Shown here piece by piece: positions 13,810-49,742 of a DNA stretch of 64,000 bases. The stretch spans positions 248,001 to 312,000 of IMG/VR virus record IMGVR_UViG_3300035661_000001. One strand, written 5' to 3'. A program made the position numbers and the translations under genes. The first letter of the stretch is position 1, and each line of letters starts with the position of its first letter. The notes beneath the pieces were generated by a model. The model saw only the letters and a list, made by a program, of their open reading frames with translations. It ran no database searches and was not told the DNA's origin.

Positions 13810-14268
13810 ATGTCCAAGAGTTTTTCGGTAGATTATTCAAAATTAGATACTAAGCTTTATAAAAAAGCTTATCGTTTGCAAGATGTTAAAAATCGTCTTG
13901 AAACCGTTGCTTTTGATATTGTTAGATTTAAAGATGGCGACCAAGGTGCCGATCTTTGGCAAGTTCAAAGTGCTGATGATGGTGAGTACATCGTTGCGTT
14001 ATACCAACCAGATGAAGAAAAAACAGCTGCTACATGGGAAGTCTCCATCAGTAAAACTGCTGGAGATTTACATATTTCTTATAAAGGAGACCCACTAGTT
14101 AAGGTGGCAGCTTCCAAATTAGGAATTCCAAGCAAAGAATTACATAAGGTTCCCGAGTATCTGCCTGCTAAGTTGGCGGAAAATAAAAAGTTGGTGAAAG
14201 CATTGCTAAATGAACTATCACCTTCTGCCAAAGAAGCTGTATTAAGCAAATACCCAGAATTGGTTTAA
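13810..14268 (+). CDS. Putative internal head protein
   Basis: GGAG RBS before ATG 13810; KKA|Y and KTA|A motifs; first gene of head region. Confidence 0.6.
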   Translation: MSKSFSVDYSKLDTKLYKKAYRLQDVKNRLETVAFDIVRFKDGDQGADLWQVQSADDGEYIVALYQPDEEKTAATWEVSISKTAGDLHISYKGDPLVKVAASKLGIPSKELHKVPEYLPAKLAENKKLVKALLNELSPSAKEAVLSKYPELV

Positions 14269-14291
14269 CCCCACCCCTAATAGGATGCTAA

Positions 14292-15905
14292 ATGAGTGTC
14301 GATAAAATCCAGCAATTAATAGGTTCATTAGCTAAGTCAATAGACGATAATGAAAAATTAGCCGTTCCAATTTTGGCAGCTAAATTAGCTAAATATGTGG
14401 CGGCTTATCCGCAAGACCAAACTCTTGGGACTATGTCTAGAGTTATAGAAAAAATGTCTTCAAATAACACTTTATTTATCAAAAGAGCTGAATTTAAATC
14501 TCTTTATAATAAATTGTATTCTAGAGGCACTAAGGTTGCAGAAATTTTTCAAGATGAACTTGGAACTGTAGTAGAGCCTAGTGGTGTATCTGTTTATCAA
14601 AGAGATAACGCGGAAAATCAACTAGATTTATATCATAGTTCAGCAGATCCTATTTTAGCTAATGCTTTAAATAGTGTATTTGATGGTTCTCCTGTAAAAA
14701 TGTATTCTCAAGAATTATCCAAACAAGCTATTAAAACAGTATCATCCACATTAGATGCTTGGAGCTTAAGACCATCATCTTTAACAGTTGATGATGGAAA
14801 TGATAAGTTTTTGATGATAAAAGCTAATTATGAAACTCCTAAAGGTGTAACTGGTTTTTATATTCCAATTGAAATACACAATAATAAGATTTCAGAAGCA
14901 TCTGTATTTATGGGCAATGGTGGTCCAGAAGATTTGAATAATACAAATATCAAATCTTATTTAAGAACAAATGCTGGTTCTAAATTAAAAGCTAATGGCT
15001 CTGCCATATTAGGTCTATTAACTACTGCGGCTACAGAGAAGAGAGAGATTAGTGGCGCCGAATTAGCTCTCACTAAATTACATGCTACAAGACAAGGAAA
15101 AGCAGAGTTCTTTCAAAATCAAATTGTTGGGCAAAAGGTCGCCGAGGCTGCGGTCAAAGATGTTGCTCTTCCTAAGTCAGATGAATTTAAATCATTCGAG
15201 GAAAAATTCGCTTCACCTCAGGGTATAGCGACGTTTCAATTTGGTGAAGAAACTGTTAAATTAGCTCGTGAGTGTATCGCTAGAGAATTAGTTGGTTTTG
15301 GTCATAAAAATCCTCAGGTAGTCGTTTCAGGCGCTGAACAAAATACAATTTATATGGGTGTAGCCCTAAATCACGGTCGCCTCGGATTTACAGTTCCAAT
15401 TAGAATAGCTAATGGAAAAATCTCACCACCATCAGTTATACTTTGTAATGGAACTATTGGATCTTTCAGTCAAGAAACCATTAGTGCATTAACTGTTGAT
15501 AATAAATCAGATTATAAAGCAGCATCTGTTGCATCTCCATTATATGGTCTTAAACCAAGTGAATTAATAACAAATATTAAACATGCTTTAGGTGAAGGAA
15601 ATCATGATAAAGCTATGGACGCTTTGGATGTATTAAGAAGTGAAGGTGATGCTAAAGCTTATGCATTTGGTTTACAAGCTTTTATGCAAGGATTATCTGG
15701 AAAAACTGCAACTGCCGAATCAGAACATAAATGTAGCATGATGATTAAGAGTGCTTCAAGTGAACAACCAGTATGTGGTCATACGGGTTTACCAGTTCAT
15801 AAAACCTATCTTGATAAAGAGGGTAACTGTAGACCATTATATAGAAAAGGCATGGATGAGGGTTACGAAGCCGTGACTTTTAACAATCACAAAATTTTTG
15901 GATAA
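14292..15905 (+). CDS. Putative internal head protein with internal domain duplication
   Basis: Two copies of GxxGFx[IV]PIxIxNxKISxxSVxxxNG; C-terminal Cys/His cluster. Confidence 0.6.
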   Translation: MSVDKIQQLIGSLAKSIDDNEKLAVPILAAKLAKYVAAYPQDQTLGTMSRVIEKMSSNNTLFIKRAEFKSLYNKLYSRGTKVAEIFQDELGTVVEPSGVSVYQRDNAENQLDLYHSSADPILANALNSVFDGSPVKMYSQELSKQAIKTVSSTLDAWSLRPSSLTVDDGNDKFLMIKANYETPKGVTGFYIPIEIHNNKISEASVFMGNGGPEDLNNTNIKSYLRTNAGSKLKANGSAILGLLTTAATEKREISGAELALTKLHATRQGKAEFFQNQIVGQKVAEAAVKDVALPKSDEFKSFEEKFASPQGIATFQFGEETVKLARECIARELVGFGHKNPQVVVSGAEQNTIYMGVALNHGRLGFTVPIRIANGKISPPSVILCNGTIGSFSQETISALTVDNKSDYKAASVASPLYGLKPSELITNIKHALGEGNHDKAMDALDVLRSEGDAKAYAFGLQAFMQGLSGKTATAESEHKCSMMIKSASSEQPVCGHTGLPVHKTYLDKEGNCRPLYRKGMDEGYEAVTFNNHKIFG

Positions 15906-15907
15906 AA

Positions 15908-16927
15908 ATGCAAGATACCGTAATCAATTTAGCTGAAATTATAAAAAAGAAATATTCTTTATATGCTGAAGCTGCCAGTTCTCCAAAAGAATTGGTAGAA
16001 GAAGCTAAGAAAGAAATAATCTTAGCTTATAAATATCATATTAGCGAAAATGCTAAAGACCCTGTGTTGCAGATTGTTGCAACGCAATACGATGAACCAT
16101 GGTCTAAAAAATTCGTGAAATTGATTACTGAATTAGTTTCTCAAATTGATGAATTATCACCTGCTGAAATATTCAAAACAACTAATCATTTATTGGGCAT
16201 GATTTCAGATTATAAATCAGATCCTGAGAAAAAGGTCAGAAATTTCATTCATGACTCAGTAAAGATTACTAGACAACCAGATAAAGAGTATCGTGAACGT
16301 ATTAAATCTAAATTTGAAACAGCGATAAAAGGTTTATCAGGTCTTTTAGAAAAAGCGGCACGTAAATTAAAAGCTTTTTCTCCTGGAACTCCATTGGCTG
16401 GTGGCACAGTTGATCCACAAAGAAAAGAATTAAGTAAAAATCAAATACGTATGTTTATGTACACTCCAATTGCTGCATCTTACGGTTTAGATAATATGGA
16501 TATGATGACTAAGATCTTAGAAGATCTCAGCTTAAAACAAAAATTAACAACCATAATTAATGCTATAGAACGTGGGCATTGTCCTGCTGATGGTCCTGAA
16601 ATGAGAGAAGCTGTTGCTGAATTGGCAGAATTAGCTAAACAAAAATTTTCTACCAATACAAGTTTTTTTGAACATGATATTGAGCCAGAATCAGAACAGG
16701 ATCCAGAAGAACTACAAAGAGCCGATCTATTTAGAGTAAAAAGAGAGCAAGCCGCTGAATTAGCTTCAGAAGAAGAAAGAAAAAGACTACAATCTCTAAT
16801 TAGAAAAAGAGATGAAGAAGCTCATCAAAACAGTATAGAAAAAGATCGTGATCGCCTTATTCGCAGCGATGGCGTATTGAAACTTCTTAATAAACTTATA
16901 TTAAAGGGAACCTATGAGAATCGCTGA
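15908..16927 (+). CDS. Hypothetical helical protein (head region)
   Basis: 339-aa ORF in operon. Confidence 0.7.
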   Translation: MQDTVINLAEIIKKKYSLYAEAASSPKELVEEAKKEIILAYKYHISENAKDPVLQIVATQYDEPWSKKFVKLITELVSQIDELSPAEIFKTTNHLLGMISDYKSDPEKKVRNFIHDSVKITRQPDKEYRERIKSKFETAIKGLSGLLEKAARKLKAFSPGTPLAGGTVDPQRKELSKNQIRMFMYTPIAASYGLDNMDMMTKILEDLSLKQKLTTIINAIERGHCPADGPEMREAVAELAELAKQKFSTNTSFFEHDIEPESEQDPEELQRADLFRVKREQAAELASEEERKRLQSLIRKRDEEAHQNSIEKDRDRLIRSDGVLKLLNKLILKGTYENR

Positions 16928-17624
16928 ATTATTAAATGCTATAGCATCTTGGTTAGAGAGTCCTAATAATGAAGCTCTCATGTTGGCAGAAGCTGATAAC
17001 AATTGCGCGACAATTGTTGCAGAGTCATGTGTATTAGCTGCGCAATTATTAAAAACAGCTGCTGATCAGGTAGATGAATTAGAGCCTGCTGCTGAATCTT
17101 TAATTACTCCAGATTCCATAGATGGAGTCGCCGCATTGGCTGGTGTTTTTGATAGATCTGGAGATCCTGAATTGAAAAAACAAGCTTCAGTTATTGATGA
17201 ACTTCTATTAACTATTGCCGCACCTCCTAATGTATTGGCAGAAAGAAAAGATTTAGAAGATAATAGAATTGAAGAGCTGAAAAAAAAATATGAAAATCCA
17301 CGCAAAGAATTAGATAAAACTAATAAGATAGCTGATTCTAATAAAGCTCTTGATAAGAGTCAATATATTAAAGAGTATAAGATAATGGAAGCTCCATTAT
17401 CTTCTCGTTATTGTCCTGATCATCCCGGTGCACAAATTGCCCGAATTGGTGAGCATATGTGGCAATGTGATTTAGATAAAAAAACATATAATTTTGAATC
17501 TGGATTTACATTAAATAATGGGTCAAAAGTTCCTGGGGGCGATGTTTCACAACAAACTCAAGGATTAGGAGTGCCAACACATTCTATATTTGATACACGT
17601 GAAGGGCGCTTGAATAGCAACTAA
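16914..17624 (+). CDS. Putative internal head protein with helical-hairpin module and Cys/His motif
   Basis: VAALAGVFDRSGDPELKKQASVIDELL; YCPDH...WQCD. Confidence 0.6.
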   Translation: MRIAELLNAIASWLESPNNEALMLAEADNNCATIVAESCVLAAQLLKTAADQVDELEPAAESLITPDSIDGVAALAGVFDRSGDPELKKQASVIDELLLTIAAPPNVLAERKDLEDNRIEELKKKYENPRKELDKTNKIADSNKALDKSQYIKEYKIMEAPLSSRYCPDHPGAQIARIGEHMWQCDLDKKTYNFESGFTLNNGSKVPGGDVSQQTQGLGVPTHSIFDTREGRLNSN

Positions 17625-17701: not shown

Positions 17702-18457
17702 ATGAATAAAAATGCTTTACGTAAGATACTCGATCATCCCGATAAAGATGAAATAATTTCTAAATTAGTATTAGGAATACCATTAAGAGATGTACATGAA
17801 TGGTTGAAAGGTAAATACACAAATGTTAGCGAGGCTAAATTTGTCATTCCTGAAAAGAGTATTAAGTCTTTTCAAGAAAATTATCTTGATCTTTATAGTA
17901 TGATTCAAGAAGATTTGATTAAATCACGTACAGCTGTAGCTACATCTACGGAAGATGATTTGCAATTAACTATTAAAAACTTACCTGCTTATAAAGCAGT
18001 AATGTTAAAATCAGCAGAAGAAGAATTAGACATTAGACAAATAATCAAAAGAATGGTAATGGGTTTAGAAACTCGTTTTTCTCAAGTATTTGATGAAATT
18101 CAAGAAGATCCTAGAAATATAAATACTAGAATAGATCGTTTAATGATTGAGTATGCCGAAGTTCTTGGCGGCTTATTAGAAAAATGTTATAAATTCACTG
18201 AAGTTCCTGCGGCTAATCAGGTCATTCAACACAATGTAACTTTGCAGGTGGTAGACCAGCATATTACTGTATTTTATGATGTAATCAAAGAAGTACTTTC
18301 TCAAATGGATCTGGAAACATCTTTATACTTCATGGAAGTATTTAATGAAAAAATGTCCAAATTAAAAGCCCCAGAAAAGGAAGCTGGACCTAGTTCAGAG
18401 ATGAGATTAGTAGAAGCTAAGTTACTTAATGAAACCATCAATAAAAAAATTAATTAA
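17702..18457 (+). CDS. Possible terminase small subunit (N-terminal HTH-like)
   Basis: KILDHPDKDEIISKLVLGIPLRDVHEWL resembles TerS N-terminal HTHs; helical body; no K-x-A processing pattern at termini. Confidence 0.4.
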   Translation: MNKNALRKILDHPDKDEIISKLVLGIPLRDVHEWLKGKYTNVSEAKFVIPEKSIKSFQENYLDLYSMIQEDLIKSRTAVATSTEDDLQLTIKNLPAYKAVMLKSAEEELDIRQIIKRMVMGLETRFSQVFDEIQEDPRNINTRIDRLMIEYAEVLGGLLEKCYKFTEVPAANQVIQHNVTLQVVDQHITVFYDVIKEVLSQMDLETSLYFMEVFNEKMSKLKAPEKEAGPSSEMRLVEAKLLNETINKKIN

Positions 18458-18471: not shown

Positions 18472-20343
18472 ATGACTGAAATGAAAGGTAAATTTCTTCC
18501 TGAACAATCATGGTTTGATTTAGTTCATTCCACTCGTAAACCTGTGGAAGATGAAGTGAATCAAAATCCTGTTGCATCGCAACATAAGATAGAAGACCTA
18601 TTGAAATTTTTTCAAAAAAATAAGATTAGATATGATGATATTGATCCAGAAGAAGATTTCTTAAAAAATTTGAAGCATGAAGATGCTTATGAGAAAAAGA
18701 AAAAAGCTTATCCAAATAACGAAGTTTATAGAAACATTCCTGGCGAAAGAGATCAGTCAAAATGGTTACAAACTGTTAAAGAAATTTATTATAAAGAAAA
18801 AGACGGAATAGATCGTATAGCTGCAATTAAACAGGCTACCAATAATTGGAATGTTAATGAAACATATGATTTTTTGAATTGGTTAAAGTTTTATGAATCT
18901 GGTTCACATATGAAATACAAAATGGCGCAGTCATGGTATGAAAATGGCGCTCCAGGATATTTTCTTCATATAAAACCAGATGCTAAAAAAGAAGAAACCA
19001 ATATAAATGGTAATGATGTAGATAAAGCGCATGATGCAATATCAAATGAATTACCAGCTAATGAAAGAAAAAGAATCATAGAAAAACAAAGAAGTAAAAT
19101 TATTGGAAGATTAGATTCTGCTGAAAAGTTACTTCGAACACATGAAGGACAAATATTTGCAGGAAGAGAATTTGAATCTTTGCTGGAAACTATTTATCAA
19201 TTAAAGAAAAAAGTACAGTTAGTTAATAAAATCAGTACTTCTACTAGATTGTACGAAGATATGATTATTCGTGAAGCTAATATCATGAATAAAAAGGGAT
19301 TCGTTAAAGCTGCTAATTTATTGTTTTCTATTTCTCAAGCCAATAATCCTCCTCCTGATGGTACTGGTACTCCAGGCACAGCTCCAGCTATTACTCCGCC
19401 ATCTCCTGCGCCTCCAGCACAGAGTAGCGGGGCTGTTGGAGGATTACCATCTATGGGTCCAGGAATGCCTCAAACTCCACCAGAGAGTGCTCCTAATGAA
19501 AATCCTGTACCTAAAGGTATTGCCGAATTTTTACAAAACTTAGATCCTGCAAAAAAAGAAAAAGACAAATCATTGTCTGACGATGTATTAGAAGTCAGTG
19601 ATACTCTTGATGTTAATGATTCTGAAAGTGAAATTTTAGTAACCGAAGCTCAAGAAGTTCCTGCTCCTTCTCAGCCCGCTCCGCCTAAGTCAAAGGCTCC
19701 ACCAAAACCTAAAGCTCCGTTAGGCATTGAGACTGAGAGTCCATTGGAAGTCACTGATAATGTCGCAGAAATTAATCAAGATCGAGTCGCTCCACAAGTT
19801 AGAGATTTCGATCGTATGATAGATTCTGCTTTTGCTAATTTAAAAGTATCAGATGTAGTAGCCAAACTTGAGGATTTAGCTAAAATCTTCAAAACTAGAG
19901 AAATACCAAGACAATTATCTATTGTTGATATGATGTTGGATAGTTTAGGATTAGCCGCATACTTCCCCTCATTATCAGAAGCTACAAATAAAGCATTAGA
20001 ATCAAACAATTATATCTCCACTCGTGTCGATGATATTTTGGCTAAACTACATGGTAGTATTGCTACAAACGAAGTTGATTTAAGAGGAGAGTCTAAACCA
20101 CTATCAAGTTCGCCTGAAATCGATTCATTAAAAAATAAATTGAGACAAGAAGAAGATAAAGATAAAGCTAGAAAGAAACTTAGAAAAGATCAAGCCAATC
20201 AAGAATTAATGGATGCGGCTCAGCCAAAAGAAACTCCTGACATAGAAATTGAAGAAGATTTAAGTAAACCTACTGCAGAAGAAGCCGCGCCGCCAGTACC
20301 AAAACCAGCTCCTGTAGCACCACCACGTCCAGTCACTAGGTAA
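18472..20343 (+). CDS. Large Pro-rich putative internal head/scaffold-like protein
   Basis: 623 aa; KMA|Q and TEA|Q motifs; Pro-rich linkers. Confidence 0.6.
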   Translation: MTEMKGKFLPEQSWFDLVHSTRKPVEDEVNQNPVASQHKIEDLLKFFQKNKIRYDDIDPEEDFLKNLKHEDAYEKKKKAYPNNEVYRNIPGERDQSKWLQTVKEIYYKEKDGIDRIAAIKQATNNWNVNETYDFLNWLKFYESGSHMKYKMAQSWYENGAPGYFLHIKPDAKKEETNINGNDVDKAHDAISNELPANERKRIIEKQRSKIIGRLDSAEKLLRTHEGQIFAGREFESLLETIYQLKKKVQLVNKISTSTRLYEDMIIREANIMNKKGFVKAANLLFSISQANNPPPDGTGTPGTAPAITPPSPAPPAQSSGAVGGLPSMGPGMPQTPPESAPNENPVPKGIAEFLQNLDPAKKEKDKSLSDDVLEVSDTLDVNDSESEILVTEAQEVPAPSQPAPPKSKAPPKPKAPLGIETESPLEVTDNVAEINQDRVAPQVRDFDRMIDSAFANLKVSDVVAKLEDLAKIFKTREIPRQLSIVDMMLDSLGLAAYFPSLSEATNKALESNNYISTRVDDILAKLHGSIATNEVDLRGESKPLSSSPEIDSLKNKLRQEEDKDKARKKLRKDQANQELMDAAQPKETPDIEIEEDLSKPTAEEAAPPVPKPAPVAPPRPVTR

Positions 20344-21125: not shown

Positions 21126-21714
21126 ATTCATTTTGTGGCACACCAATAACATTGGAAAAAAGGTAAATGAGTTTACCGTTGGGGAGTTTAGAGAAAAAAG
21201 AGGAAATTTTTTCTACGTATTATGTAAGTGTTCATGTGGTAAAGACAAGTTCGTAAAACTGTATAATTTAGCAAATAATAGCGCTATGACATGTGGACAT
21301 ACCAGATATACTTCTGAAATACAAGCTAAGAAGAGTAGAAAACAAAATCCACAATTAACCTCTATTAAGCGCGTATACAAAAACTATAAAAGAAATGCGG
21401 ACGATACTTTGACATTAGAACAATTTATGTTCTTGTCTCAAAAAGATTGTGTGTACTGTGGATTGCCACCACTTAAAACATATAATTATTTCACAGATAT
21501 TTCATATGGAAAGAAATCTACACAATATTCTATAGATAATGGTAATTATGTATGGAATGGTATTGATCGTATAGATTCATCTAAGCCTCATACTATAGAC
21601 AATTGTGTAACGTGCTGTTACATTTGTAATAGGGCAAAATCAGATATGTCTATAGAAGAGTTTTACAAATGGGTTGATAAAATATCAGCTTACAAAGTGG
21701 GCTCAAATGTATAA
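21112..21714 (+). mobile_element. HNH homing endonuclease
   Basis: LCKCSCG...MTCGH N-domain; CVYCG; GIDRIDSSK...NCVTCCYICNRAK. Confidence 0.88.
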
Positions 21715-41809: not shown

Positions 41810-42967
41810 ATGTCTGAAAAATTAGATTTGATTAGAAAGTATGCTCAGGAAGCTGAAGCACCTGTTCCTGTACCTTCCAAGAAAAAAAATAAACCAGCAG
41901 AACCAGCAACGGCTGCCGCCGCTGCTCCAGTAGTACCAAATAGTGATGTTCCTGTACCATTAGCAAAGAAATTTTCTCCAGAATTAAAAAACAGATTACA
42001 AGGTAAACCTAAAGTACAACCAGGTAATTCTCCACAACAAATTGCGGCAGCCAGAGAAGCTGTTAAAGAAATGCAAATTGCTATGCAAGAATTAGCAGGA
42101 GCAGTAATTACTGATTCTGAATCTGGAACTATGGCTTATAAACCTCATGACGCCCAACAACCTGGTGCTGCGCCAACAGTTAAAAGTTCTAAAAAAAGTT
42201 TTAATGATTTTATAACTGAACAATATTTGGGTGGATTGGATGAAGATAAAAAAGGTGTAGAGTGGAATACTGATCAAAAAGTCACTTCTTTGCAAGGAAA
42301 AAAACAAACACAAACTGATTTATATGAATTAGATGTTGTAATGAATACGCTTCGTAGAATTGGAGCGTCCAGTAAAGAATTTATTGCCGACGGTAAATGG
42401 GATTTTAGAACTGATAATGCATTAAGAAACATTATGGGTTTTTCTTATGCCTTATTACAATTAGAAGGAGATTTTGGGTTAGAAAATAATTTTTATAGTT
42501 TTGATCACTGGAAAAATTTTAATAAAGCACTTACAGGTTATAAAATAAGTAACGGTATTGTTCAATTAAATGCAGCACAAAAAGTTGCAAGAGCAAATGC
42601 TATTAATAAACATTTAAAAGCTATTACTAAACTTTATTCTCATTTTAGACAACAAGTTCTGGCTAGACCAGAATTCAGACCTACTATTGAAGGTAAAAGA
42701 TTAATTGATAGATATTCTGCTCAAGGATCAAATAAAGATGTTTTAACTTCCCAAGAAGATCAAATGTCTAAATCTGATGCGATCAAAATACCAGTTACTT
42801 ATCCGGCACCTAAATTACCCGGTGGTAATTTAGATTATATTCCATTAAAAGCTTTAAGAGATAAAGGTGAATATATAAAATGGATGGTCGGTTATGCTGG
42901 TAATTCTGAGCAAGCAGCAACTGATATTTTTAATAAAACTATCAAACCTAAAATCGAAACAACCTAA
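41810..42967 (+). CDS. Putative internal head/ejection protein
   Basis: IRKYA|Q near N-terminus, then Ala/Pro linker. Confidence 0.55.
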   Translation: MSEKLDLIRKYAQEAEAPVPVPSKKKNKPAEPATAAAAAPVVPNSDVPVPLAKKFSPELKNRLQGKPKVQPGNSPQQIAAAREAVKEMQIAMQELAGAVITDSESGTMAYKPHDAQQPGAAPTVKSSKKSFNDFITEQYLGGLDEDKKGVEWNTDQKVTSLQGKKQTQTDLYELDVVMNTLRRIGASSKEFIADGKWDFRTDNALRNIMGFSYALLQLEGDFGLENNFYSFDHWKNFNKALTGYKISNGIVQLNAAQKVARANAINKHLKAITKLYSHFRQQVLARPEFRPTIEGKRLIDRYSAQGSNKDVLTSQEDQMSKSDAIKIPVTYPAPKLPGGNLDYIPLKALRDKGEYIKWMVGYAGNSEQAATDIFNKTIKPKIETT

Positions 42968-42975: not shown

Positions 42976-44523
42976 ATGTCTTTTTTATACGAAATATTTG
43001 ATGAAGCTATGAGCCAGGCGGCTCTTGATAAAATTCTAAAAAAAACGGCACAGGTAGCTCAAACGCCTTTATCTCCAAATGATGTTGCTAAAAAATTAGT
43101 TAATCGTTTGTCAAGAGAAATGTCTGCCGCACCGGAACCATTAAATATTGCTTCAGAAACAGCTACGCCCATTGATTTAAATATCAATGATTTGCAATCA
43201 TTAGGCAAACTATTACAATTTATGTCTAATAATAAAATAAAATTGGACGGTTCTAGAATTGTTTATTCTGAAGCTGATGTAAATTCTTTGCCCGAAGAAG
43301 AACGAAATCAATTAGCTCCTATAACTGTTAATTTATCTCGTGATGCTGCTAGTAGAAAATGGAATACTGCAGATTATTATTCTAAACTACCACTGTTAAT
43401 TAAATATGTGTCTTATCTTCAAGAAAAAGCACAATCACTTAAAAAAAGTGGAGATGCTCAAGGCAAAATTTTAGAAGTCATGGTTGGTAAATTAATAGAT
43501 TCAATAAATAATGTTAAACCTGATTCAGGATTGTCACGTGTACCAAAATCTCAACCTGATAAGCCAAATGAATTACCAGACAATACAGTTATAGATACTT
43601 TTGGGTCAAAAGTATTTAATATAGCTGACCCTTATGCAGATAAGGGTGATATGCCATTAAGTAGCAAAGATTTATCTTCTAAAGAATCATTAAATGCTTG
43701 GTTAAAACAAGCGCCTGAAGCTACAATTCTATATGGACAAACCCTTAATAAATTTACTGATCCGGCTGCTAATCATTGTAATATAATAAATGTTTTATAC
43801 AAGCGAGCTTATAATTTAAAAAATACGGCATCTCCAGCTGATTCTAAAAAATATAATTTTTATTTAAACAAAATCATTCAACTAGGACAATTATTTACTG
43901 ATCCTTCTGGAAGTGCATGTACTATTGGCGGTACAGGTAGTAGTGGAGTTCATAATAGACATAATTTTTATGGTCCTTCTGGACAGGGAGATGATGGATC
44001 CGGTGGTAAAACTGGGGTATCAAGCCAAATACTAGAACAAATAATACAGACTTTACCATTTGATACTCAAGATATAGATTTCATTAGAATTAAGAATTTC
44101 TTTTCATTGTATACTAAAGTTACATCCAGTAATTATGTTCAATCAGCTATTACGTCTATGGGCGAGGCTTTAAAAGCTATGGCTACGGCAAGTGAGTCTA
44201 CTTTAACTGGTAATCAAGAGAAATTTAGAATTACTAGAAATGTTCAAGAGATGGCAACTTGGTTAAAACAACCTGCTGGCAATCATGCTTTACCTTTCCT
44301 GTATGCTCTTCAACAAGTTCTTACAGAAACAGAAAAAGTATTAGGAATGTTTTATAGCGAATATGCTAGAACATTATATTCAGGTGATGCAGTAAGATTA
44401 ACTAATGAGCAAAAAGCTTTGGTGGAAGCTCAATATCTTGGGGGGAATTCTATCTTCTCTCAAAATTTAAGAGATGTTCAATCATTGATGGCAAATACTC
44501 AACAAGTTTTAGGTAAAAAATGA
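42976..44523 (+). CDS. Putative internal head/ejection protein
   Basis: ILKKTA|Q near N-terminus; 515 aa. Confidence 0.55.
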   Translation: MSFLYEIFDEAMSQAALDKILKKTAQVAQTPLSPNDVAKKLVNRLSREMSAAPEPLNIASETATPIDLNINDLQSLGKLLQFMSNNKIKLDGSRIVYSEADVNSLPEEERNQLAPITVNLSRDAASRKWNTADYYSKLPLLIKYVSYLQEKAQSLKKSGDAQGKILEVMVGKLIDSINNVKPDSGLSRVPKSQPDKPNELPDNTVIDTFGSKVFNIADPYADKGDMPLSSKDLSSKESLNAWLKQAPEATILYGQTLNKFTDPAANHCNIINVLYKRAYNLKNTASPADSKKYNFYLNKIIQLGQLFTDPSGSACTIGGTGSSGVHNRHNFYGPSGQGDDGSGGKTGVSSQILEQIIQTLPFDTQDIDFIRIKNFFSLYTKVTSSNYVQSAITSMGEALKAMATASESTLTGNQEKFRITRNVQEMATWLKQPAGNHALPFLYALQQVLTETEKVLGMFYSEYARTLYSGDAVRLTNEQKALVEAQYLGGNSIFSQNLRDVQSLMANTQQVLGKK

Positions 44524-45599
44524 GTCACAGTAACAGTGAAATAAGGTTCTATGTAGATAGTTTAATTGTAGAAACTATTTTAAAAAATAAAAACCTATAT
44601 AAACAAGCTGATGCTGGCGGGATGGTTGCGTCTTTAATAGATAAAGTAAAAGAATATGTTGGAAATCATATTGATCCAAATGATAAATCCGGAAGTTTAA
44701 TTAACATTTTAGGTCCTGGTGCTATTTCAGTTGCGTTTGCATCTATGAGTCTTGGATGGCTTGGAATTTTAATTGGTTTGTCCATGAGAGTTTTTAATAT
44801 TGATGTCAAGGGCATTATTAGTTCTATTTGGGGTAAGTTAAAACCAGCTATTTCTGGGGACAAACAAATTTCTTCTAAAACAGTTGATTCATTTGTTGAA
44901 TCATCAGTGCAAGAAAATTATCAACCCGCAACTCCAGAAGAAGCCGAAAAAGCTGCTAACTTAATAAAAGCTAAATCTAGTGCCATATTAAATGATGCAA
45001 AATTTGTCAAGATAGCTATGATAAATTTTAATAACGGAACTTTAACTAAAGAAGCCGGCTTTTTTGATATGTTTAATTCTCATAAAACTAATATAGTTAA
45101 TATATTAACTAGAGTTCTAAGCTGGGTGTTTAAAGTAGCTTTAGCATCAGCTGGTCTAATGGTAGCCGGAGATGTTGTTAATAAGTTTTTGAATAGACCA
45201 AACGCCATAGATGGTACTATACAGAAAGGTCACCCAACAGAAACGGTTTCCGCAGCGCCGATTAATGTCTCTAAACAGAAAAAATTTCCAGTAAAATCTG
45301 GATATGTTTCAGAAAAATACAATATTGGTGAATCTATTTGGTCAGAAGATATTAGTAATGATCCTGGATCAATAGAAAATATGTTGATTGATTTTGCTAA
45401 AGATGTATATGATGGTTTAAATGGAAAAGAAAATATCATAAGAACTTCTCCGGCATTTCAAGTAGTTAAAGATAGAATTGTTTGGTACAATCATACCAGC
45501 CCACGAGCACCTATGGTTTGGTTGCCTAGATATTTTTCCTCAAAAAAACAAATAGTAGACTATTTCATTGATGATGTTGCTGACAGAACCACTACATAA
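44520..45599 (+). CDS. Putative ejection protein with hydrophobic segments
   Basis: LYKQA|D (res 28-30), LTKEA|G; hydrophobic stretch res about 60-89 and a second after KEAG. Confidence 0.55.
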   Translation: MSHSNSEIRFYVDSLIVETILKNKNLYKQADAGGMVASLIDKVKEYVGNHIDPNDKSGSLINILGPGAISVAFASMSLGWLGILIGLSMRVFNIDVKGIISSIWGKLKPAISGDKQISSKTVDSFVESSVQENYQPATPEEAEKAANLIKAKSSAILNDAKFVKIAMINFNNGTLTKEAGFFDMFNSHKTNIVNILTRVLSWVFKVALASAGLMVAGDVVNKFLNRPNAIDGTIQKGHPTETVSAAPINVSKQKKFPVKSGYVSEKYNIGESIWSEDISNDPGSIENMLIDFAKDVYDGLNGKENIIRTSPAFQVVKDRIVWYNHTSPRAPMVWLPRYFSSKKQIVDYFIDDVADRTTT

Positions 45600-45642: not shown

Positions 45643-46863
45643 ATGAGCAATAGTGACGTTTTAAATAATTTTATCAAAATAGCGCAAGAGAAGGGCTTAA
45701 TTTCAGATAAAGCTCCAGAGAAAGCAAAACAAATTCTGGAAAAAACACGTCGTGCCGATTCATTAAGTGTTGCTGATATAGAAAAACTATATGGCATTAA
45801 ACCTGATATGGCAAAAGACAATAAATATGATAGAAATATTGTTGAAGATGCACATCCAGAATCATACGTTGCTTCAAATGCTCATGATAAATTAAACGGT
45901 TTAGTAGAGAATATTAATCAAAGACAAAATATTATCTTGCATATTCTTGATAAAACTCCTAATGGACATTTAACTCAACACAAATATGCTGAAAAAGATT
46001 TAATCTTATCTTTGGTTAGAATTGGAAATGATTTAGATAATAAAAATAAAGAAAATTTAAGAGTTTTAGCTGATGCTTGTTTAATGCAAGTTAGTAAGCC
46101 TATGAAAAAAGAAGGTGCGTGGGGATTATTAGCAATTCCTGTTTTACTAGGGGCATTATATTTACAACAACATATGAATTTTACAAATGAAGGTTTTGAA
46201 AAAAATCATCAAAAACTTTCTGCAGAGATCGATGATTTATTACAATCTAGTTCTTCATGGGGAGTTGGATATGATTATAAATCTGATTTCAAAACTATGT
46301 TACAAGATTTTAAATTAAAATTGGATGGTTTTTATGAGTTATACTCAAAAACAACTTCTGTAATATCAGATTTGGAAAAACCAAGAACTGCACAAGATTT
46401 GATAGAGTTATCAAAACATCCTCAAACAGATTCTGTGGTTAAAGCTTATGGTGCGTTAAAAGCGGCAGCAGATAATATGTTACCATACATAAATACTATT
46501 GAAAAAAACTTTTCATCTGAAGCTTATAAAGCCCGCCAAATAGAAGATAAAGGATTTATGTCTTCCTTAGTTGATCGTGTTCATGTTTTACATGGTGGTA
46601 AAGGAATGGTTGCAGATGATTTTGATGATGTTGTAAGAGTTATAAGTCCTTACAAGCAATCTATTAAAGAATTACTTGATTTATTAAAAAATGCTGAATC
46701 AATAGAACAATCTGCTCAAACAAAAATACAGGAAGCCTCTTCAGGAATTCCAAATGAAAAACCTGTTCCAAGTGCTGCTCCTCAAAATAAATCTAAAAAA
46801 CCTCACAGCATGGATGCTGAAGTTGAACAATTAGAAAAAGATTTAACTGGCGGATTACTTTAA
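45643..46863 (+). CDS. Putative ejection protein
   Basis: FIKIA|Q, HKYA|E, MKKEG|AWGLLAIPVLLGALYL. Confidence 0.55.
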   Translation: MSNSDVLNNFIKIAQEKGLISDKAPEKAKQILEKTRRADSLSVADIEKLYGIKPDMAKDNKYDRNIVEDAHPESYVASNAHDKLNGLVENINQRQNIILHILDKTPNGHLTQHKYAEKDLILSLVRIGNDLDNKNKENLRVLADACLMQVSKPMKKEGAWGLLAIPVLLGALYLQQHMNFTNEGFEKNHQKLSAEIDDLLQSSSSWGVGYDYKSDFKTMLQDFKLKLDGFYELYSKTTSVISDLEKPRTAQDLIELSKHPQTDSVVKAYGALKAAADNMLPYINTIEKNFSSEAYKARQIEDKGFMSSLVDRVHVLHGGKGMVADDFDDVVRVISPYKQSIKELLDLLKNAESIEQSAQTKIQEASSGIPNEKPVPSAAPQNKSKKPHSMDAEVEQLEKDLTGGLL

Positions 46864-47777: not shown

Positions 47778-47872
47778 ACTTTTCGACATGTCTATTCGAT
47801 AGGCATCACAAGTTCACTTAATTTATATTAAAGCTGGGTTATCCGGCAAATATTCCATTTAGGAGTTTTTTC

Positions 47873-48886
47873 ATGAATATGTTTAGTAATCAAGGGCAAA
47901 TGAATGCTTCTTCAATGAAAGATGTTTTACTTCAATTAGTAAAATACGCTTCAATTCTTGAAGAGAATCAACCAGCCAACATGGGTCTAGCTGGTCAGGT
48001 ATCCTTGAGCGATGATAAACGCGACGAATTGATTTCTCGTGCTATCATGACTCAAGATGGTAAAATTGCTTTAGCCCAAGCAATGGCAAATCCAATTCGT
48101 AGAAACTTAGATTACCACGGTATTTCACGTCGTGCATTAGTTGTTGATCCTCTTCCACAAGGTGCTCAACCAACTTACGATAGAGATATCGATGTATCTG
48201 CTGTAGTTATTTCTTCTAACGGTACTGGACCAGAGTCTAGAGTTTTCGGTGATAGAGTAGTAGTACCTACCTTCGAAATCTATGCTAACCCAACTGTTAG
48301 AATTTCCGAAGTTAGACGTCGTAGATTCAACGTTATTGACCGTGCCGTTCAAAAAGCTCGTCAAGAAATAATGGCTCAAGAAGATGCGAACGTTTTCGCA
48401 GCTCTTGATGCTGCTGCTTCAGTAGAAAATACTCTTACTGATATTTCTGATGCTGGTCTTTTGAAGAGAGATCTTGTTGAAATCAAGGCTCAAATTGATC
48501 GTTGGGACTTAGTGACTACTAAATACTTTATGAATATCAATGAATTTACCGATATTCTTAAATGGGGTAGCGGTGGTGGACAAGGTGTTGGTGGTGGTGA
48601 TTTCGATCCTGTCACAATGAGAGAAGTTCTACAAACCGGTCTTTACGCCCATATCTGGGGTACTGATATTATGGTAAGCAAGATCGTTCCACCAGGAACC
48701 ATCTATGGCTGTGCCGATCCTGAATTCGTTGGTGTTATGCCAATTAGACAAGACATCGAAGTTCTTCCTGCTGATGAACCAAAACAATTAAAACTTGGTT
48801 GGGTTGTAAGCGAAGAAATCGGTATCGCGATCGTCAATCCTCGTGGTGTTTCTGCTGGTCGTAAATCTGTAACCATCGGTTCCTAA
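47873..48886 (+). CDS. Major capsid protein (HK97-like fold)
   Basis: 337 aa; AMANPIRRNLDY...VVDPLPQG, RFNVIDRAVQKARQEIMAQED backbone helix, LKLGWVVSEEIGIAIVNPRGV C-terminus; strong RBS, flanked by terminators. Confidence 0.88.
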   Translation: MNMFSNQGQMNASSMKDVLLQLVKYASILEENQPANMGLAGQVSLSDDKRDELISRAIMTQDGKIALAQAMANPIRRNLDYHGISRRALVVDPLPQGAQPTYDRDIDVSAVVISSNGTGPESRVFGDRVVVPTFEIYANPTVRISEVRRRRFNVIDRAVQKARQEIMAQEDANVFAALDAAASVENTLTDISDAGLLKRDLVEIKAQIDRWDLVTTKYFMNINEFTDILKWGSGGGQGVGGGDFDPVTMREVLQTGLYAHIWGTDIMVSKIVPPGTIYGCADPEFVGVMPIRQDIEVLPADEPKQLKLGWVVSEEIGIAIVNPRGVSAGRKSVTIGS

Positions 48887-48920
48887 TACAAATATCTAAC
48901 ACTAACTTAGTGTTATCGTG

Positions 48921-48954
48921 AATAAGAGTCACTTGCAAGGTGACTCTTATTTTA
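48921..48954 (+). terminator. Intrinsic terminator after capsid gene
   Basis: AATAAGAGTCAC-7nt-GTGACTCTTATT plus TTT. Confidence 0.88.
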
Positions 48955-49043
48955 TTGTTTACTTAAATCATTACTCGGACAGTTTAATGATTTTTGAGTG
49001 TAATATTGTTGTATTATTACATAATCTACTACCGAGATAAATA

Positions 49044-49742
49044 ATGAATATTGACGAGATTTTAGATATATACACTTTAATTTCTGACGGAATCTCTGAT
49101 ATCCCCAGCAGGAAACAGGATTTTCTAGTTAGAAAAAGAGCATTTGATGCTGCTCAAAAACCAGCTATGGTTAAAAATGCTTTTGATACTCGTCGTATCG
49201 ACCAAGAAGTAGAATATAATCCTAGACGTGGATTGCAAAACTATAATAGAAGCGAACAATTTGTTTCGGAAGGTTTAGAGAAAAAAATAAGAAGTTTCTC
49301 TAAACTTAGAGACGTTTTGGTTGATTTAAAATTACAATTTGGTAAAGATCAGAACTGGCAAGACAGTAATGCCCGCGTATTATTATCAACTTTGGACAAG
49401 GGTTTGAGAATTGGAATTAATGATGGAGATTTTTCAGAAAATCAACCGTCAATGGGAAGCTTAGATTATATCGAAGAATTATTGCATGTTAGATATAGGC
49501 TAGGATTTGATGATTTGACTAAATTAGGAGCAACAGATCTGAAAAAGATTATTCTTTCTAAAGATGAAGAATTAACTCACGGAGATATGAATAAAGATTT
49601 GCACATCAGTAAAAATGATATCAGTACACAAACATATGATACTCTTCTAGAAAAATTATTCGGAGGCATCAGAGCAACGAAAGATAATCCTGAAGTAGAA
49701 AGAACGATCACTATAACTATTAAAGACAAATTTGTAGAGTAA
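49044..49742 (+). CDS. Hypothetical protein (possible head protein)
   Basis: 232 aa; MVKNA|F motif; preceded by GTAATA-N6-TAT. Confidence 0.65.
   Translation: MNIDEILDIYTLISDGISDIPSRKQDFLVRKRAFDAAQKPAMVKNAFDTRRIDQEVEYNPRRGLQNYNRSEQFVSEGLEKKIRSFSKLRDVLVDLKLQFGKDQNWQDSNARVLLSTLDKGLRIGINDGDFSENQPSMGSLDYIEELLHVRYRLGFDDLTKLGATDLKKIILSKDEELTHGDMNKDLHISKNDISTQTYDTLLEKLFGGIRATKDNPEVERTITITIKDKFVE

What the first reader, a model, noticed from the sequence alone, without database searches (positions are those of the whole stretch)
13810..49742. Region-wide hydrophobic-K-x-[A/G/S] motif: putative maturation cleavage code for about 25 head proteins
Seen: the motif sits near N-termini or at domain/linker junctions of nearly every head-region protein. 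Examples: capsid LVKYA|S (res 22-26), portal RNKFA|Q (res 81-83), MIKKA|Y, MQRTA|Q, FIKIA|Q, IRKYA|Q, LKKTA|Q, LYKQA|D, LTKEA|G, IIKEG|R, LVKTA|A, LVKEG|Q, LQKEA|V, YKMA|Q, YKYA|S, MVKNA|F, and many sites in the protease-scaffold. It is absent from the N-termini of decoration and fibre proteins. Known: T4 gp21 and phiKZ gp175 process many head proteins at short x-x-E motifs. Inferred: this phage uses a different, Lys(P3)/small(P1) specificity across a very large internal proteome. K-x-A/G occurs by chance about once per 100 residues here, so the argument rests on position, not count.
Basis: partly seen in the sequence, partly recalled or inferred. Interest (0 to 1): 0.82.

Follow-up and report, generated by a model that had tools for sequence, protein, structure and literature searches.

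The report
Predicted head-protein cleavage motif in megaphage
About twenty head-region proteins of this 452-kb relative of Bacillus phage G carry a conserved short tag (hydrophobic-x-Lys-x-Ala/Gly), most likely the cutting site of the phage's own capsid-maturation protease, a specificity not reported for other giant phages and testable in cultured phage G.

Summary
An unbiased scan of three-position patterns ranks [LIVMF]-x-K-x-A first. It lies in the first 50 residues of 17 of 29 head-region proteins and 31 of 624 other proteins of the same genome (p=8e-14); within-protein shuffles of the first 45 residues expect 2.3. In orthologues from IMG/VR megaphage contigs, often only 27-50% identical, K(P3), A/G(P1) and the hydrophobic P5 stay fixed while P4, P2 and the flanks vary.

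The motif also brackets the protease domain of the 1219-aa protease-scaffold ORF and is 2.4-fold enriched in 138 diverse homologues. That domain models onto T4 gp21 (Z 10.5), then herpesvirus proteases, with invariant His133 and Ser184. T4/phiKZ-type x-x-E motifs are not enriched.

Bacillus phage G shares the protease-flanking sites, and at least 22 of its ORFs start with MKRL-x-K-K-A/S/G.

Best explanation: a maturation cleavage code and probable packaging tag, cut after the Ala/Gly. Cleavage itself is inferred, not shown. It is a new variant of a known kind.

The parts
13810..49742 (+). Head-morphogenesis module holding the motif-bearing ORFs. Recognisable genes: terminase large subunit 24728-26614, portal 26669-28507, protease-scaffold 33824-37483 and MCP 47873-48886.
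   Evidence: PHROG hits; MCP 54% identical to phage G gp27; motif map.
33956..34624 (+). Prohead protease domain, residues about 45-267 of ORF 33824-37483. Invariant His133 (34220-34222) and Ser184 (34373-34375). Invariant CxxC...CxH insertion, C194-H210 (34403-34453).
   Evidence: phrog_18299 'head maturation protease', E 6e-13. Invariant columns in alignments of 19 and 47 sequences. AF2 model pLDDT 85. VIA-align Z 10.5 to T4 gp21 5jbl_A, 7.4 to HSV-1 protease and 7.0 to EBV protease.
33830..33955 (+). Predicted N-terminal pro-segment of the protease with three motif copies: FIKLG|E (P1 = 7), FRKTA|A (P1 = 37) and LKKIA|P (P1 = 44). Pro at P1' makes the third a doubtful cut.
   Evidence: K and A/G kept in 87-100% of 71 orthologues. 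Sites 37 and 44 align with phage G gp19 LVKTA|A and VVKIA|P and are kept in most 50%-cluster representatives.
34610..34624 (+). LKKIA|D (P1 = 267): predicted cut releasing the protease domain from the scaffold part.
   Evidence: Kept in 85% of orthologues while P4 and P2 identity is 0.14 and 0.21 and flank identity 0.41. Lies in the long helix after the last strand of the modelled domain. Phage G gp19 has LEKVA|S (250) and LLKIA|S (276) at the same end.
34625..37483 (+). Scaffold-like C-terminal 950 residues (A/D/E-rich, with a tandem ~95-aa repeat). Conserved motif copies at P1 = 410, 496, 656, 823, 833, 1054, 1083, 1125 and 1180.
   Evidence: Motif density in 138 full-length homologues (50%-identity representatives) is 0.93 per 100 aa against 0.39 in shuffles, higher in 97% of them; decoy motifs give ratios of 0.63-1.14, and R in place of K gives 1.62. 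The scaffold role is inferred from position, size and composition.
47936..47950 (+). Major capsid protein site LVKYA|S (P1 = residue 26), giving a predicted 26-residue propeptide.
   Evidence: Kept in 98% of 59 distinct orthologues. Homology to phage G gp27, which has no N-terminal extension, starts only at residue 45.
26903..26917 (+). Portal site RNKFA|Q (P1 = 83). Orthologues read G-[LMIVF]-x-K-x-[A/G/S]|Q-V/A.
   Evidence: K and A/G kept in 96% of 57 orthologues, P4 and P2 identity 0.18-0.19.
28588..29958 (+). 456-aa ORF next to the portal. Sites: M-x-K-x-A|Q at residues 1-5 (the window has MQRTA), FIKEA|N (153) and ISKYA|R (433).
   Evidence: Kept in 87%, 94% and 83% of orthologues; flank identity 0.32 at site 153.
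49044..49742 (+). 232-aa ORF after the MCP. Sites VRKRA|F (33) and MVKNA|F (46).
   Evidence: Kept in 84% and 100% of 48 orthologues with P2 identity 0.04-0.08.
45643..46863 (+). 406-aa ORF. Sites FIKIA|Q (14) and MKKEG|A (158).
   Evidence: Kept in 98% and 94% of 52 orthologues that are about 43% identical overall.
44520..45599 (+). 359-aa ORF. Site LYKQA|D (30), followed by an indel-rich stretch.
   Evidence: K and A/G kept in 100% of 50 orthologues, P2 identity 0.02, flank identity 0.34.
42976..44523 (+). 515-aa ORF. Site LKKTA|Q (25); orthologues read [F/L]-x-K-x-[G/A]|Q.
   Evidence: Visible in the alignment although MAFFT misplaces it; the family is only about 28% identical.
41810..42967 (+). 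385-aa ORF. Site IRKYA|Q (12), followed by a hypervariable Pro/Ala-rich linker.
   Evidence: Kept in 86% of 42 orthologues, flank identity 0.26. In some orthologues the propeptide shrinks to M + motif.
40697..41800 (+). 367-aa ORF. Four sites: LEKVA|R (21), ATKIA|V (36), MYKYA|D (69) and HYKQA|Q (82).
   Evidence: Kept in 76-92% of 24 orthologues.
37508..38176 (+). 222-aa Cys-rich ORF. Site VYKYA|S (34); the hydrophobic residue here is Tyr at P4.
   Evidence: K and A kept in 94% of 34 orthologues, followed by a very variable region.
38505..38906 (+). 133-aa ORF (paralogue of 38277-38489). Site LSKIA|E (65); starts MIKKS.
   Evidence: Kept in 80% of orthologues, flank identity 0.30. Weaker case.
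31352..32092 (+). 246-aa ORF. Sites IIKEG|R (25) and LVKTA|A (154).
   Evidence: Kept in 77% and 95% of 59 orthologues.
32865..33521 (+). ORF whose true start is probably the second Met (32871). MIKKA|Y forms its first five residues.
   Evidence: Orthologues begin M-I-K-[KR]-A-Y.
22463..23380 (+). 305-aa ORF. Internal site LVKEG|Q (210), directly after a variable insertion.
   Evidence: Kept in 100% of 21 orthologues.
21707..22408 (+). 233-aa ORF. Starts MYKKS|YFQGTEEPTP, the same module as the scaffold repeats. Internal site IIKSA|I (119) precedes an insertion of up to 100 aa found in relatives.
   Evidence: Kept in 94% of 17 orthologues, P2 identity 0.00.
18472..20343 (+). 623-aa ORF. Sites KYKMA|Q (152) and FVKAA|N (281).
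   Evidence: Kept in 94% of 15 orthologues each.
14292..15905 (+). 537-aa ORF. C-terminal site MIKSA|S (488).
   Evidence: Kept in 88% of 15 orthologues, including the most distant loci L191 and L194.
16914..17624 (+). 236-aa ORF. Sites LLKTA|A (49) and LKKQA|S (91).
   Evidence: Kept in 81% and 67% of orthologues. Moderate case.
13810..14268 (+). 152-aa ORF. Site LYKKA|Y (20).
   Evidence: Only 6 orthologues, of which 3 of the 4 covering the N-terminus keep K-K-A/I-Y. Weak case.
23384..24034 (+). 216-aa ORF. Site LQKEA|V (36); orthologues read L-x-K-x-[A/S]|V-Q.
   Evidence: Strict conservation only 0.44 because Ser replaces Ala in several orthologues.
17702..18457 (+). 251-aa ORF that starts MNKNA|L.
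   Evidence: Kept in 80% of orthologues. Weak: the flanks are also conserved (0.79).

Best explanation
The motif [L/F/I/M/V](P5)-x-K(P3)-x-[A/G](P1) is the recognition and cleavage site of the phage's own capsid-maturation serine protease. That protease is residues about 45-267 of the 1219-aa protease-scaffold ORF 33824-37483.

Proposed sequence of events, all inferred:
1. The protease-scaffold fusion co-assembles with portal, MCP and about 20 accessory or internal head proteins into a procapsid.
2. The protease frees itself by cutting at its own flanking sites (P1 = 37, perhaps 44, and 267).
3. It chops the scaffold part at about nine further sites so the pieces can leave.
4. It trims N-terminal propeptides of 5-85 residues from MCP, portal and the accessory proteins, and cuts some of them at internal linker sites.

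Because the tag is kept even where the propeptide has shrunk to M + motif, the motif itself probably also acts as the signal that recruits a protein to the protease-scaffold core. This would resemble the T4 capsid-targeting sequence, which ends in the gp21 site.

Shown here: the motif's enrichment, its N-terminal position, its conservation, its presence around and inside the protease-scaffold, and the protease fold with invariant His and Ser. Inferred: that cutting happens, that it falls after P1, and that this protease does it.
For: (1) Enrichment and position. The pattern ranks first of all enumerated patterns: 17/29 head ORFs against 31/624 others, p = 7.7e-14. Shuffles expect 2.3 +/- 1.5. 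Density is 1.57 per 100 aa in the first 50 residues against 0.48 later and 0.22-0.24 in controls.

(2) Conservation. P5, P3 and P1 are fixed while P4, P2 and the flanks vary and indels abut the site, in families only 27-50% identical. The motif is kept more than decoy patterns.

(3) Link to the protease. Motif copies bracket the protease domain and fill the scaffold part. Density is 2.4 times the shuffle value in 138 homologues, while reversed, Glu, Ser/Thr and Asp/Glu decoys give 0.63-1.14.

(4) Enzyme identity. PHROG 'head maturation protease'. AF2 model with pLDDT 85. Best structural match is T4 gp21, Z 10.5 with 139 of 165 residues aligned, then HSV-1 and EBV proteases. H133 and S184 are invariant in 47 sequences down to 41% identity. 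Iyer et al. 2021 (PMC7824862) already assign group-3 jumbo phages, which include phage G, a divergent SH-superfamily or XkdF-type head peptidase.

(5) Phage G. gp19 has LVKTA|A-KVVKIA|P aligned to the window's FRKTA|A-SLKKIA|P. N-terminal sites occur in gp9, gp13, portal gp14 and gp20. At least 22 ORFs begin M-[KSTR]-R-L-x-K-x-[A/S/G].

(6) Precedent. T4 gp21 (I/L-x-E), phiKZ and 201phi2-1 (19 cleaved head proteins each) and SPN3US gp245 (A-x-E, mostly N-terminal propeptides plus self-cleavage): PMC10052503 and PMC12991175.
Against: - No protein-level evidence was available. The phage G virion mass-spectrometry paper is not held and the 2025 phage G paper has no held supplements.
- No Pfam protease family matches the domain, even at E <= 1. 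Structural equivalence of H133 and S184 to the gp21 catalytic residues was not checked on coordinates.
- Site 44 has Pro at P1', which serine proteases usually disfavour.
- Conserved matches also occur in folded, presumably uncut places: MCP 232 and 309, portal 329, terminase 534, and a GIY-YIG endonuclease at 52. The motif alone therefore does not define a cut.
- One broad decoy pattern is retained as well as the motif.
- Most 'head' ORFs have no functional annotation.
- In phage G the genome-wide N-terminal excess is modest: 49 observed against 34 +/- 6 expected.
Confidence: 0.75

Rival explanations
1. The motif is a docking or encapsidation tag only. It binds the scaffold or protease core, or another head component, to load proteins into the procapsid, and is not cut, or not cut at that bond.
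For: The tag persists even where the N-terminal extension is only 5-8 residues: M-x-K-x-A in ORFs 28588 and 32865 and MKRL-x-K-K-A in phage G. That is odd for a mere propeptide boundary. The T4 capsid-targeting sequence shows that short N-terminal tags can direct packaging (PMC9026906, listed; otherwise my own knowledge).
Against: The same motif sits at both ends of the protease domain and many times within the scaffold part, which has to be removed from the capsid. It also occurs at internal linker positions next to indels. An invariant small P1 residue and a fixed register are typical of a protease subsite pattern. In T4 the targeting tag is itself cleaved, so this reading complements the main one more than it excludes it.
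Confidence: 0.1
2. The sites are cut, but by a different protease: the phage's ClpP paralogues or a host enzyme such as the Prp cysteine protease, which trims L27 and the staphylococcal phage 80alpha capsid and scaffold proteins after F-A.
For: The genome encodes two ClpP genes at G000 217515-218653. [quoted passage not shown] Aromatic-Ala at P2-P1 in several sites (KYA, KFA) loosely recalls the Prp site, which I know from memory.
Against: ClpP is a processive degrader without this kind of site specificity (established knowledge). No Prp gene is in the phage genome and the host is unknown. The Prp site (L-N-L-Q-x-F-A) has no Lys at P3. The motif co-occurs with, flanks and fills the assemblin-fold protease-scaffold across 138 diverse homologues, which is what self-processing predicts.
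Confidence: 0.07
3. The pattern is a by-product of composition or secondary structure, such as Lys/Ala-rich amphipathic N-terminal helices or shared ancestry of the N-termini, and has no specific function.
For: Head proteins are richer in K and A than the rest: 8.9% and 8.0% against 7.7% and 5.8%. Many sites lie in predicted helices. A broad hydrophobic/acidic/hydrophobic decoy is conserved about as well.
Against: Within-protein shuffles give 2.3 proteins against 17 observed. The reversed motif and the K-to-E, A-to-S/T and A-to-D/E variants are neither enriched nor conserved. P4 and P2 vary freely while P5, P3 and P1 are fixed. Apart from the motif, the N-termini of different families are unrelated.
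Confidence: 0.03

Closest known systems
T4 gp21 prohead protease system, with cleavage after Glu in I/L-x-E
   Same: Best structural match of the protease domain (5jbl_A, Z 10.5). One head protease, many substrates. Short N-terminal propeptides or targeting tags ending in the site. Self-processing, and scaffold degraded at many sites (PMC12991175; PMC10052503).
   Different: P1 is Ala/Gly, not Glu. The key specificity residue is Lys at P3, with a hydrophobic P5. [LIV]-x-E is not enriched. The protease is fused to a ~950-aa scaffold-like region and carries a CxxC...CxH insertion. No Pfam S77 match.
phiKZ gp175, 201phi2-1 and SPN3US gp245 giant-phage head proteolysis (S/A/G-x-E, or A-x-E)
   Same: A giant phage in which many head and internal proteins are processed (19 in phiKZ and 201phi2-1, 9 in SPN3US), mostly through N-terminal propeptides, including MCP, portal and the protease itself (PMC10052503).
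   Different: A different clade (phage G-like, group 3 of Iyer et al. 2021), a different motif and a different P1 chemistry. Here everything is predicted from sequence; in those phages it was shown by mass spectrometry.
Herpesvirus assemblin (peptidase S21), with cleavage at (V/L/I)-x-A|S
   Same: Second and third best structural matches (HSV-1 8bq1 Z 7.4, EBV 1o6e Z 7.0). The protease is fused to the scaffold protein and releases itself. P1 is Ala (my knowledge of the HSV and CMV M and R sites). The MCP site here even reads ...YA|S.
   Different: P3 is Lys (93%) rather than V/L/I. P1' is mixed (Q/E/A/S, with Ser only 10%). Z 7-7.4 is within the range the tool warns can reflect a common arrangement. 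No sequence similarity.
Bacillus phage G gp19 (annotated head maturation protease) and its head module
   Same: Homologous protease (34% identity, E 1e-29), portal and MCP (54% identity). The same motif flanks the protease, and N-terminal L-x-K-x-A tags are present.
   Different: gp19 is 300 aa without the long scaffold fusion. The phage G MCP has no propeptide. The tags are mostly an 8-residue MKRL-x-K-K-[A/S/G] leader on ORFs scattered over the genome.

Membership tests
Capsid-maturation serine proteases of the assemblin / T4 gp21 / HK97 gp4 fold (MEROPS S21, S77, S78) | Characteristic protease fold | tested here: met
   AF2 model pLDDT 85, pTM 0.76. Foldseek's top hits are T4 gp21 chains (probability 0.87-0.91) and EBV protease. 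VIA-align Z 10.5, rmsd 2.9 A over 139 of 165 residues of 5jbl_A, standing above the next unrelated rows at about 6.
Capsid-maturation serine proteases of the assemblin / T4 gp21 / HK97 gp4 fold (MEROPS S21, S77, S78) | Invariant catalytic His and Ser | tested here: met
   H133 (D-H motif) and S184 (S-M-G motif) are invariant in 19 sequences including phage G gp19 and in 47 sequences down to 41% identity. Their superposition on the gp21 catalytic residues was not checked on coordinates.
Capsid-maturation serine proteases of the assemblin / T4 gp21 / HK97 gp4 fold (MEROPS S21, S77, S78) | Match to a curated family profile (Pfam S77 PF03420, S78 PF04586, S78_2 PF14550) | tested here: not met
   No Pfam protease hit for the ORF at E <= 0.1 or for any of 47 homologues at E <= 1. 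Only phrog_18299 'head maturation protease' matches, E 6e-13. The ESM Atlas lists S78, S77 and S78_2 clusters among its feature neighbours. This is a divergent lineage, as Iyer et al. 2021 noted for group-3 jumbo phages.
Capsid-maturation serine proteases of the assemblin / T4 gp21 / HK97 gp4 fold (MEROPS S21, S77, S78) | Encoded in the head module between portal and MCP, with or next to a scaffold | tested here: met
   Gene order is terminase 24728, portal 26669, protease-scaffold 33824, MCP 47873. The protease is fused to a 950-aa A/D/E-rich region.
Capsid-maturation serine proteases of the assemblin / T4 gp21 / HK97 gp4 fold (MEROPS S21, S77, S78) | Demonstrated proteolysis of head proteins | not testable with these tools
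   Needs virion proteomics or an enzyme assay.
T4 / phiKZ / SPN3US-type multi-substrate head processing | Many head proteins carry a short shared motif at the end of an N-terminal propeptide, and the protease is flanked by the same motif | tested here: met
   About 20 ORFs have orthologue-conserved sites, and the protease is flanked at 37/44 and 267. This holds in silico only.
T4 / phiKZ / SPN3US-type multi-substrate head processing | Cleavage after Glu (I/L-x-E or S/A/G-x-E) | tested here: not met
   [LIVM].E and [SAG].E are not enriched at head-protein N-termini (p = 0.1-0.3) or in protease-scaffold homologues (ratios 1.10 and 1.05). [LIVMF].E.[AG] gives 0.92.
Herpesvirus assemblin substrate specificity, (V/L/I)-x-A|S | Ala at P1 | tested here: met
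   P1 is A 80% and G 17% in family-weighted counts over 27 conserved sites. Those sites were selected on the motif, so this is partly circular. In the unbiased scan, A alone is the best third position.
Herpesvirus assemblin substrate specificity, (V/L/I)-x-A|S | Hydrophobic P3 and Ser at P1' | tested here: not met
   P3 is K 93%. P1' is Q 15%, E 15%, A 12% and S 10%.
Host Prp-type processing of phage capsid proteins (L27-like L-N-L-Q-x-F-A|) | L27-like leader before an F-A cleavage bond; Prp protease available | tested here: not met
   No N-L-Q leader is visible in the sites listed. No Prp (PF04327) in the phage genome. The host is unknown, so a host Prp cannot be excluded.

The most novel reading that the evidence does not exclude
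The h-x-K-x-A/G tag is a combined packaging and cleavage 'zip code'. It lets the protease-scaffold core capture, load and then release dozens of proteins encoded all over the genome, possibly including enzyme-like effectors ejected into the host. Examples would be the phage G ORFs with the MKRL-x-K-K-A/S tag and the shared [F/Y]-H-G-T-[S/D] motif. If so, the injected proteome of phage G-like megaphages could be read from sequence alone. The protease would be a lineage whose Ala/Gly P1 preference links phage prohead proteases to herpesvirus assemblin specificity.
Probability: 0.35. Interest if true: 0.72.

Novelty: new variant of a known kind. Interest (0 to 1): 0.6.

Why it matters
Proteolytic head maturation has been mapped experimentally in only a few phage lineages: T4, phiKZ, 201phi2-1, SPN3US and HK97. 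For phage G-like megaphages I found no cleavage specificity reported in the searchable literature. These megaphages include the only cultured one and hundreds of environmental contigs of 340-480 kb.

A sequence-readable cleavage and packaging code would have several uses:
- It would annotate about 20 otherwise function-less ORFs per genome as virion-internal proteins.
- It would give mature protein boundaries for cryo-EM model building of very large capsids.
- It would predict which scattered genes encode packaged, possibly ejected, proteins.
- It would define a protease specificity relevant to defence systems that sense prohead proteases by being cut by them (CBASS; PMC12991175).

The prediction can be tested at once in phage G by re-searching existing virion mass-spectrometry data.

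Tried and rejected
- AF2 of the protease N-terminus with an 18-sequence, 64-88% identical alignment gave pLDDT 44 and was discarded. It was redone with 47 diverse representatives.
- A profile search of PDB sequences found nothing relevant. Pfam found no protease family.
- The phage G capsid and mass-spectrometry paper (PMC7316594) is not held. The phage G tail paper has nothing on proteolysis. The 2025 phage G paper names gp19 as head maturation protease but gives no sites and has no held supplements.
- I looked for the motif in more distant MCP relatives. The Lu11 MCP N-terminus lacks it. The Tunturi_5 and LR745208 MCPs have no propeptide, and the long N-terminus of Rctr197k has no match in register. 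On present evidence the motif is confined to the phage G-like clade.
- The search for related loci with ORF 18472 returned only 3 loci, so ORFs from 13.8 to 24 kb rest on 6-36 orthologues taken from the terminase-anchored loci.
- The strict column-wise conservation score under-counts sites in indel-rich propeptides (for example ORFs 42976 and 23384). Those were judged from the printed alignments.
- Considered and rejected: signal peptides (no hydrophobic core), HK97-type crosslink motifs (MCP only), and translation-driven Lys-rich N-termini (these do not explain the fixed A/G or the internal sites).

Full report
CONTEXT. The window is bases 248001-312000 of a complete 451,956-bp virus record with direct terminal repeats. 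Almost all genes lie on the + strand. The major capsid protein (MCP, 47873-48886) is 54% identical to gp27 of Bacillus phage G, the only cultured megaphage. Recognisable head genes are terminase 24728-26614, portal 26669-28507 and a 1219-aa ORF (33824-37483) whose residues 106-214 hit phrog_18299 'head maturation protease'. Nearly all other ORFs between 13.8 and 49.7 kb have no family match. The module also contains a tRNA nucleotidyltransferase, an HNH endonuclease and a GIY-YIG endonuclease. I excluded these, the terminase and one minus-strand ORF from the 'head' set.

OBSERVATION. I called 658 genes in the whole genome with a simple codon-usage caller. I then compared 29 head-region ORFs with the 624 ORFs outside the head region.

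- The sharper pattern [LIVMF]-x-K-x-A occurs in the first 45 residues of 17/29 head ORFs and 32/624 controls, p = 1e-13.
[LIVMF].K.A came first (17/29 against 31/624 in residues 2-50, p = 7.7e-14, about 1e-8 after Bonferroni). Its relaxations filled the next ranks.
- Shuffling each head protein's own residues gives 2.3 +/- 1.5 proteins with the pattern, against 17 observed.
- Site density is 1.57 per 100 aa in the first 50 residues of head proteins, 0.48 in the rest of them, and 0.22-0.24 in controls at both positions.
- T4/phiKZ-type motifs are not enriched.

CONSERVATION. IMG/VR holds hundreds of relatives: 319 MCP matches and 106 protease matches. I fetched 190 loci around MCP, protease and terminase. 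MCPs are 88-94% identical, but the neighbouring ORFs are only 27-50% identical, which makes them informative.

In family after family the hydrophobic P5, Lys P3 and Ala/Gly P1 are fixed while P4, P2 and the flanks change. Indel-rich or low-complexity stretches often start just after the site. Examples:
- ORF 44520, P1 = 30: 100% kept, P2 identity 0.02.
- ORF 45643, P1 = 14 and 158.
- ORF 41810, P1 = 12.
- ORF 49044, P1 = 33 and 46.
- Portal, P1 = 83. The window's RNKFA is an outlier; orthologues have a hydrophobic P5.
- ORF 28588, M-x-K-x-A|Q as residues 1-5, plus 153.
- ORF 40697, four sites.
- Internal sites in ORFs 14292, 18472, 21707, 22463 and 31352.
These are documented.

As a within-alignment control, decoy patterns (reversed, K-to-E, A-to-S/T, A-to-D/E and others) are retained much less: median 0.07-0.33 against 0.65, with p from 0.015 to 9e-6. 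One broad hydrophobic/acidic/hydrophobic decoy did not differ. Family-weighted residue counts at 27 conserved sites give P5 L/F/I, P4 often V/I, P3 K 93%, P1 A 80% and G 17%, and a mixed P1' of Q/E/A/S. About 20-22 ORFs have a supported site. The two decoration-like paralogues, the lysin-like ORF and the ORFs from 49750 on mostly have none.

THE ENZYME. The 1219-aa ORF carries motif copies at P1 = 7, 37, 44 and 267, and at about nine further conserved positions downstream.

- An exhaustive profile search found 2026 relatives, 209 of them at E <= 1e-30. The best 150 are mostly protease-scaffold fusions of 1100-1600 aa.
- In the 138 of these that are at least 900 aa long, motif density is 0.93 per 100 aa against 0.39 in shuffles, higher in 97% of them. 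Decoys give ratios of 0.63-1.14, Arg at P3 gives 1.62, and x-x-E motifs give 1.05-1.10.
- With a 47-sequence alignment, AF2 gave a confident model of residues 1-289, pLDDT 85.
- Foldseek's best hits are T4 gp21 and EBV protease. VIA-align gives Z 10.5 for gp21 (139 of 165 residues, 2.9 A), 7.4 for HSV-1 protease and 7.0 for EBV protease, above unrelated rows at about 6.
- His133 and Ser184 are invariant down to 41% identity and in phage G gp19, as is a CxxC...CxH insertion.
- No Pfam protease model matches. This fits the 'divergent SH-superfamily peptidase' that Iyer et al. 2021 proposed for group-3 jumbo phages.

Sites 37 and 44 lie at the end of an N-terminal helix that precedes the first strand of the domain. 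Site 267 lies in the helix that leaves it.

PHAGE G. gp19, the annotated head maturation protease, aligns LVKTA|A-KVVKIA|P-KEDDFLY with the window's FRKTA|A-SLKKIA|P-KAEDFLY. It has two further copies at its C-terminal end. gp9, gp13, portal gp14 and gp20 have N-terminal copies. The phage G MCP has no N-terminal extension, and homology to the window's MCP begins 18 residues after the predicted cut.

Over the whole phage G genome, 19 of 676 ORFs begin MKRL, and at least 22 begin M-[KSTR]-R-L-x-K-x-[A/S/G]. That is the same motif with Leu4 as P5. The overall N-terminal excess of the strict pattern is modest, 49 against 34 +/- 6.

More distant MCP relatives (Lu11, Tunturi_5, LR745208, Rctr197k) do not show the motif. 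The code therefore seems confined to the phage G-like clade.

MECHANISM. The best reading, with confidence about 0.75, is that the motif is the substrate site of the phage's own assemblin-fold prohead protease, cut after the Ala/Gly. The protease-scaffold co-assembles with the shell. It then releases itself, fragments its scaffold part, and trims MCP, portal and about 20 accessory proteins.

The tag survives even where the propeptide is only 5-8 residues long. It therefore probably also recruits proteins to the core, as the T4 capsid-targeting sequence does.

What is shown: enrichment, position, conservation, association with the protease-scaffold, the fold and the invariant catalytic-type residues. 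What is inferred: the cut itself, its exact bond and the responsible enzyme.

RIVALS.
- A docking-only tag (0.10). This hardly explains the sites inside and around the scaffold-protease.
- Another protease (0.07). Two ClpP genes exist in the genome and no Prp. A host enzyme cannot be excluded.
- A compositional or structural by-product (0.03). This is contradicted by the shuffles and decoys.

Cautions. Conserved matches also occur in folded, surely uncut places: MCP 232 and 309, portal 329, terminase 534 and a GIY-YIG endonuclease. Site 44 has Pro at P1'.

COMPARISON AND NOVELTY. The system works like the T4 gp21, phiKZ gp175 and SPN3US gp245 systems: one head protease, many substrates, N-terminal propeptides and self-cleavage (PMC10052503, PMC12991175). 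It fails their defining Glu-at-P1 feature. Its Ala/Gly at P1 and its protease-scaffold fusion recall herpesvirus assemblin, but P3 and P1' differ. I found no report of this specificity in six full-text searches. The one paper most likely to hold relevant mass-spectrometry data could not be read, so prior knowledge cannot be fully excluded. I rate the finding a new variant of a known kind, of moderate to good interest, because it is immediately testable in phage G.

Noticed in passing
window 35024-35590 (residues ~401-590 of ORF 33824-37483) and 21707-21760: The scaffold part contains a tandem ~95-aa repeat. Each copy starts K-K-[S/A]|Y-[Y/F]...G.E.P.TP and contains GHMAYEDDKHMHGQ.PFPGVG.VDGLHPSPDSAE. 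ORF 21707-22408 begins with the same module (MYKKS|YFQGTEEPTP). Function unknown; possibly a shell-binding module released by cleavage.
   Followed up: partly
window 34403-34453: An invariant CxxC...CxH insertion (C194, C197, C208, H210) lies inside the protease domain. It is conserved in 47 homologues and in phage G gp19, and some homologues give weak zinc-finger or zinc-ribbon Pfam hits. It is probably a structural Zn knuckle, which I do not know from T4 gp21.
   Followed up: partly
proteins P0015, P0016, P0025, P0031, P0041, P0048 and others: About 20 of the 150 best protease-scaffold representatives match the profile in two stretches, with 130-380 extra residues inserted before profile position ~105 of the protease domain. 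This could be an intein or another mobile insertion in the protease gene.
   Followed up: no
phage G record NC_023719 (loci L199-L225), e.g. ORFs at 11937, 16055, 28218, 73330, 81748, 147654, 178671, 245994, 254652, 255160, 255911, 258975, 446709, 482110: 19 of 676 phage G ORFs start MKRL, and at least 22 start M-[KSTR]-R-L-x-K-x-[A/S/G]. They are scattered over the genome. Several share a downstream [F/Y]-H-G-T-[S/D] motif (81748, 163172, 178671, 245994, 446709, 35181). This paralogue family might be ADP-ribosyltransferase- or PARP-like, and so candidate packaged effectors.
   Followed up: partly
window 12425-13276, 21112-21714, 39711-40628, 58622-59350; 20379-21125: Three GIY-YIG-type ORFs and one HNH homing-endonuclease-like ORF are interspersed in and around the head module. 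A tRNA nucleotidyltransferase gene sits among the head genes.
   Followed up: no
window 38973-39662 and 46983-47678: Two similar ~230-aa ORFs look like paralogous decoration proteins; one lies directly upstream of the MCP, as gp26 does in phage G. Neither has an N-terminal motif. 46983 has one conserved LTLKGG at residue 28, of uncertain meaning.
   Followed up: partly
loci L002-L081 against window 37508-49742: Evolutionary rates contrast strongly. The MCP is 88-94% identical across 80 metagenomic contigs, while adjacent internal or accessory head ORFs are only 27-50% identical and full of indels and Pro/Ala-rich linkers.
   Followed up: partly
G000:C1:217515-218653 (outside the window): Two adjacent ClpP paralogues. 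The second shows one in-frame TGA within the Pfam match, which could be a frameshift, a recoding event or two genes.
   Followed up: no
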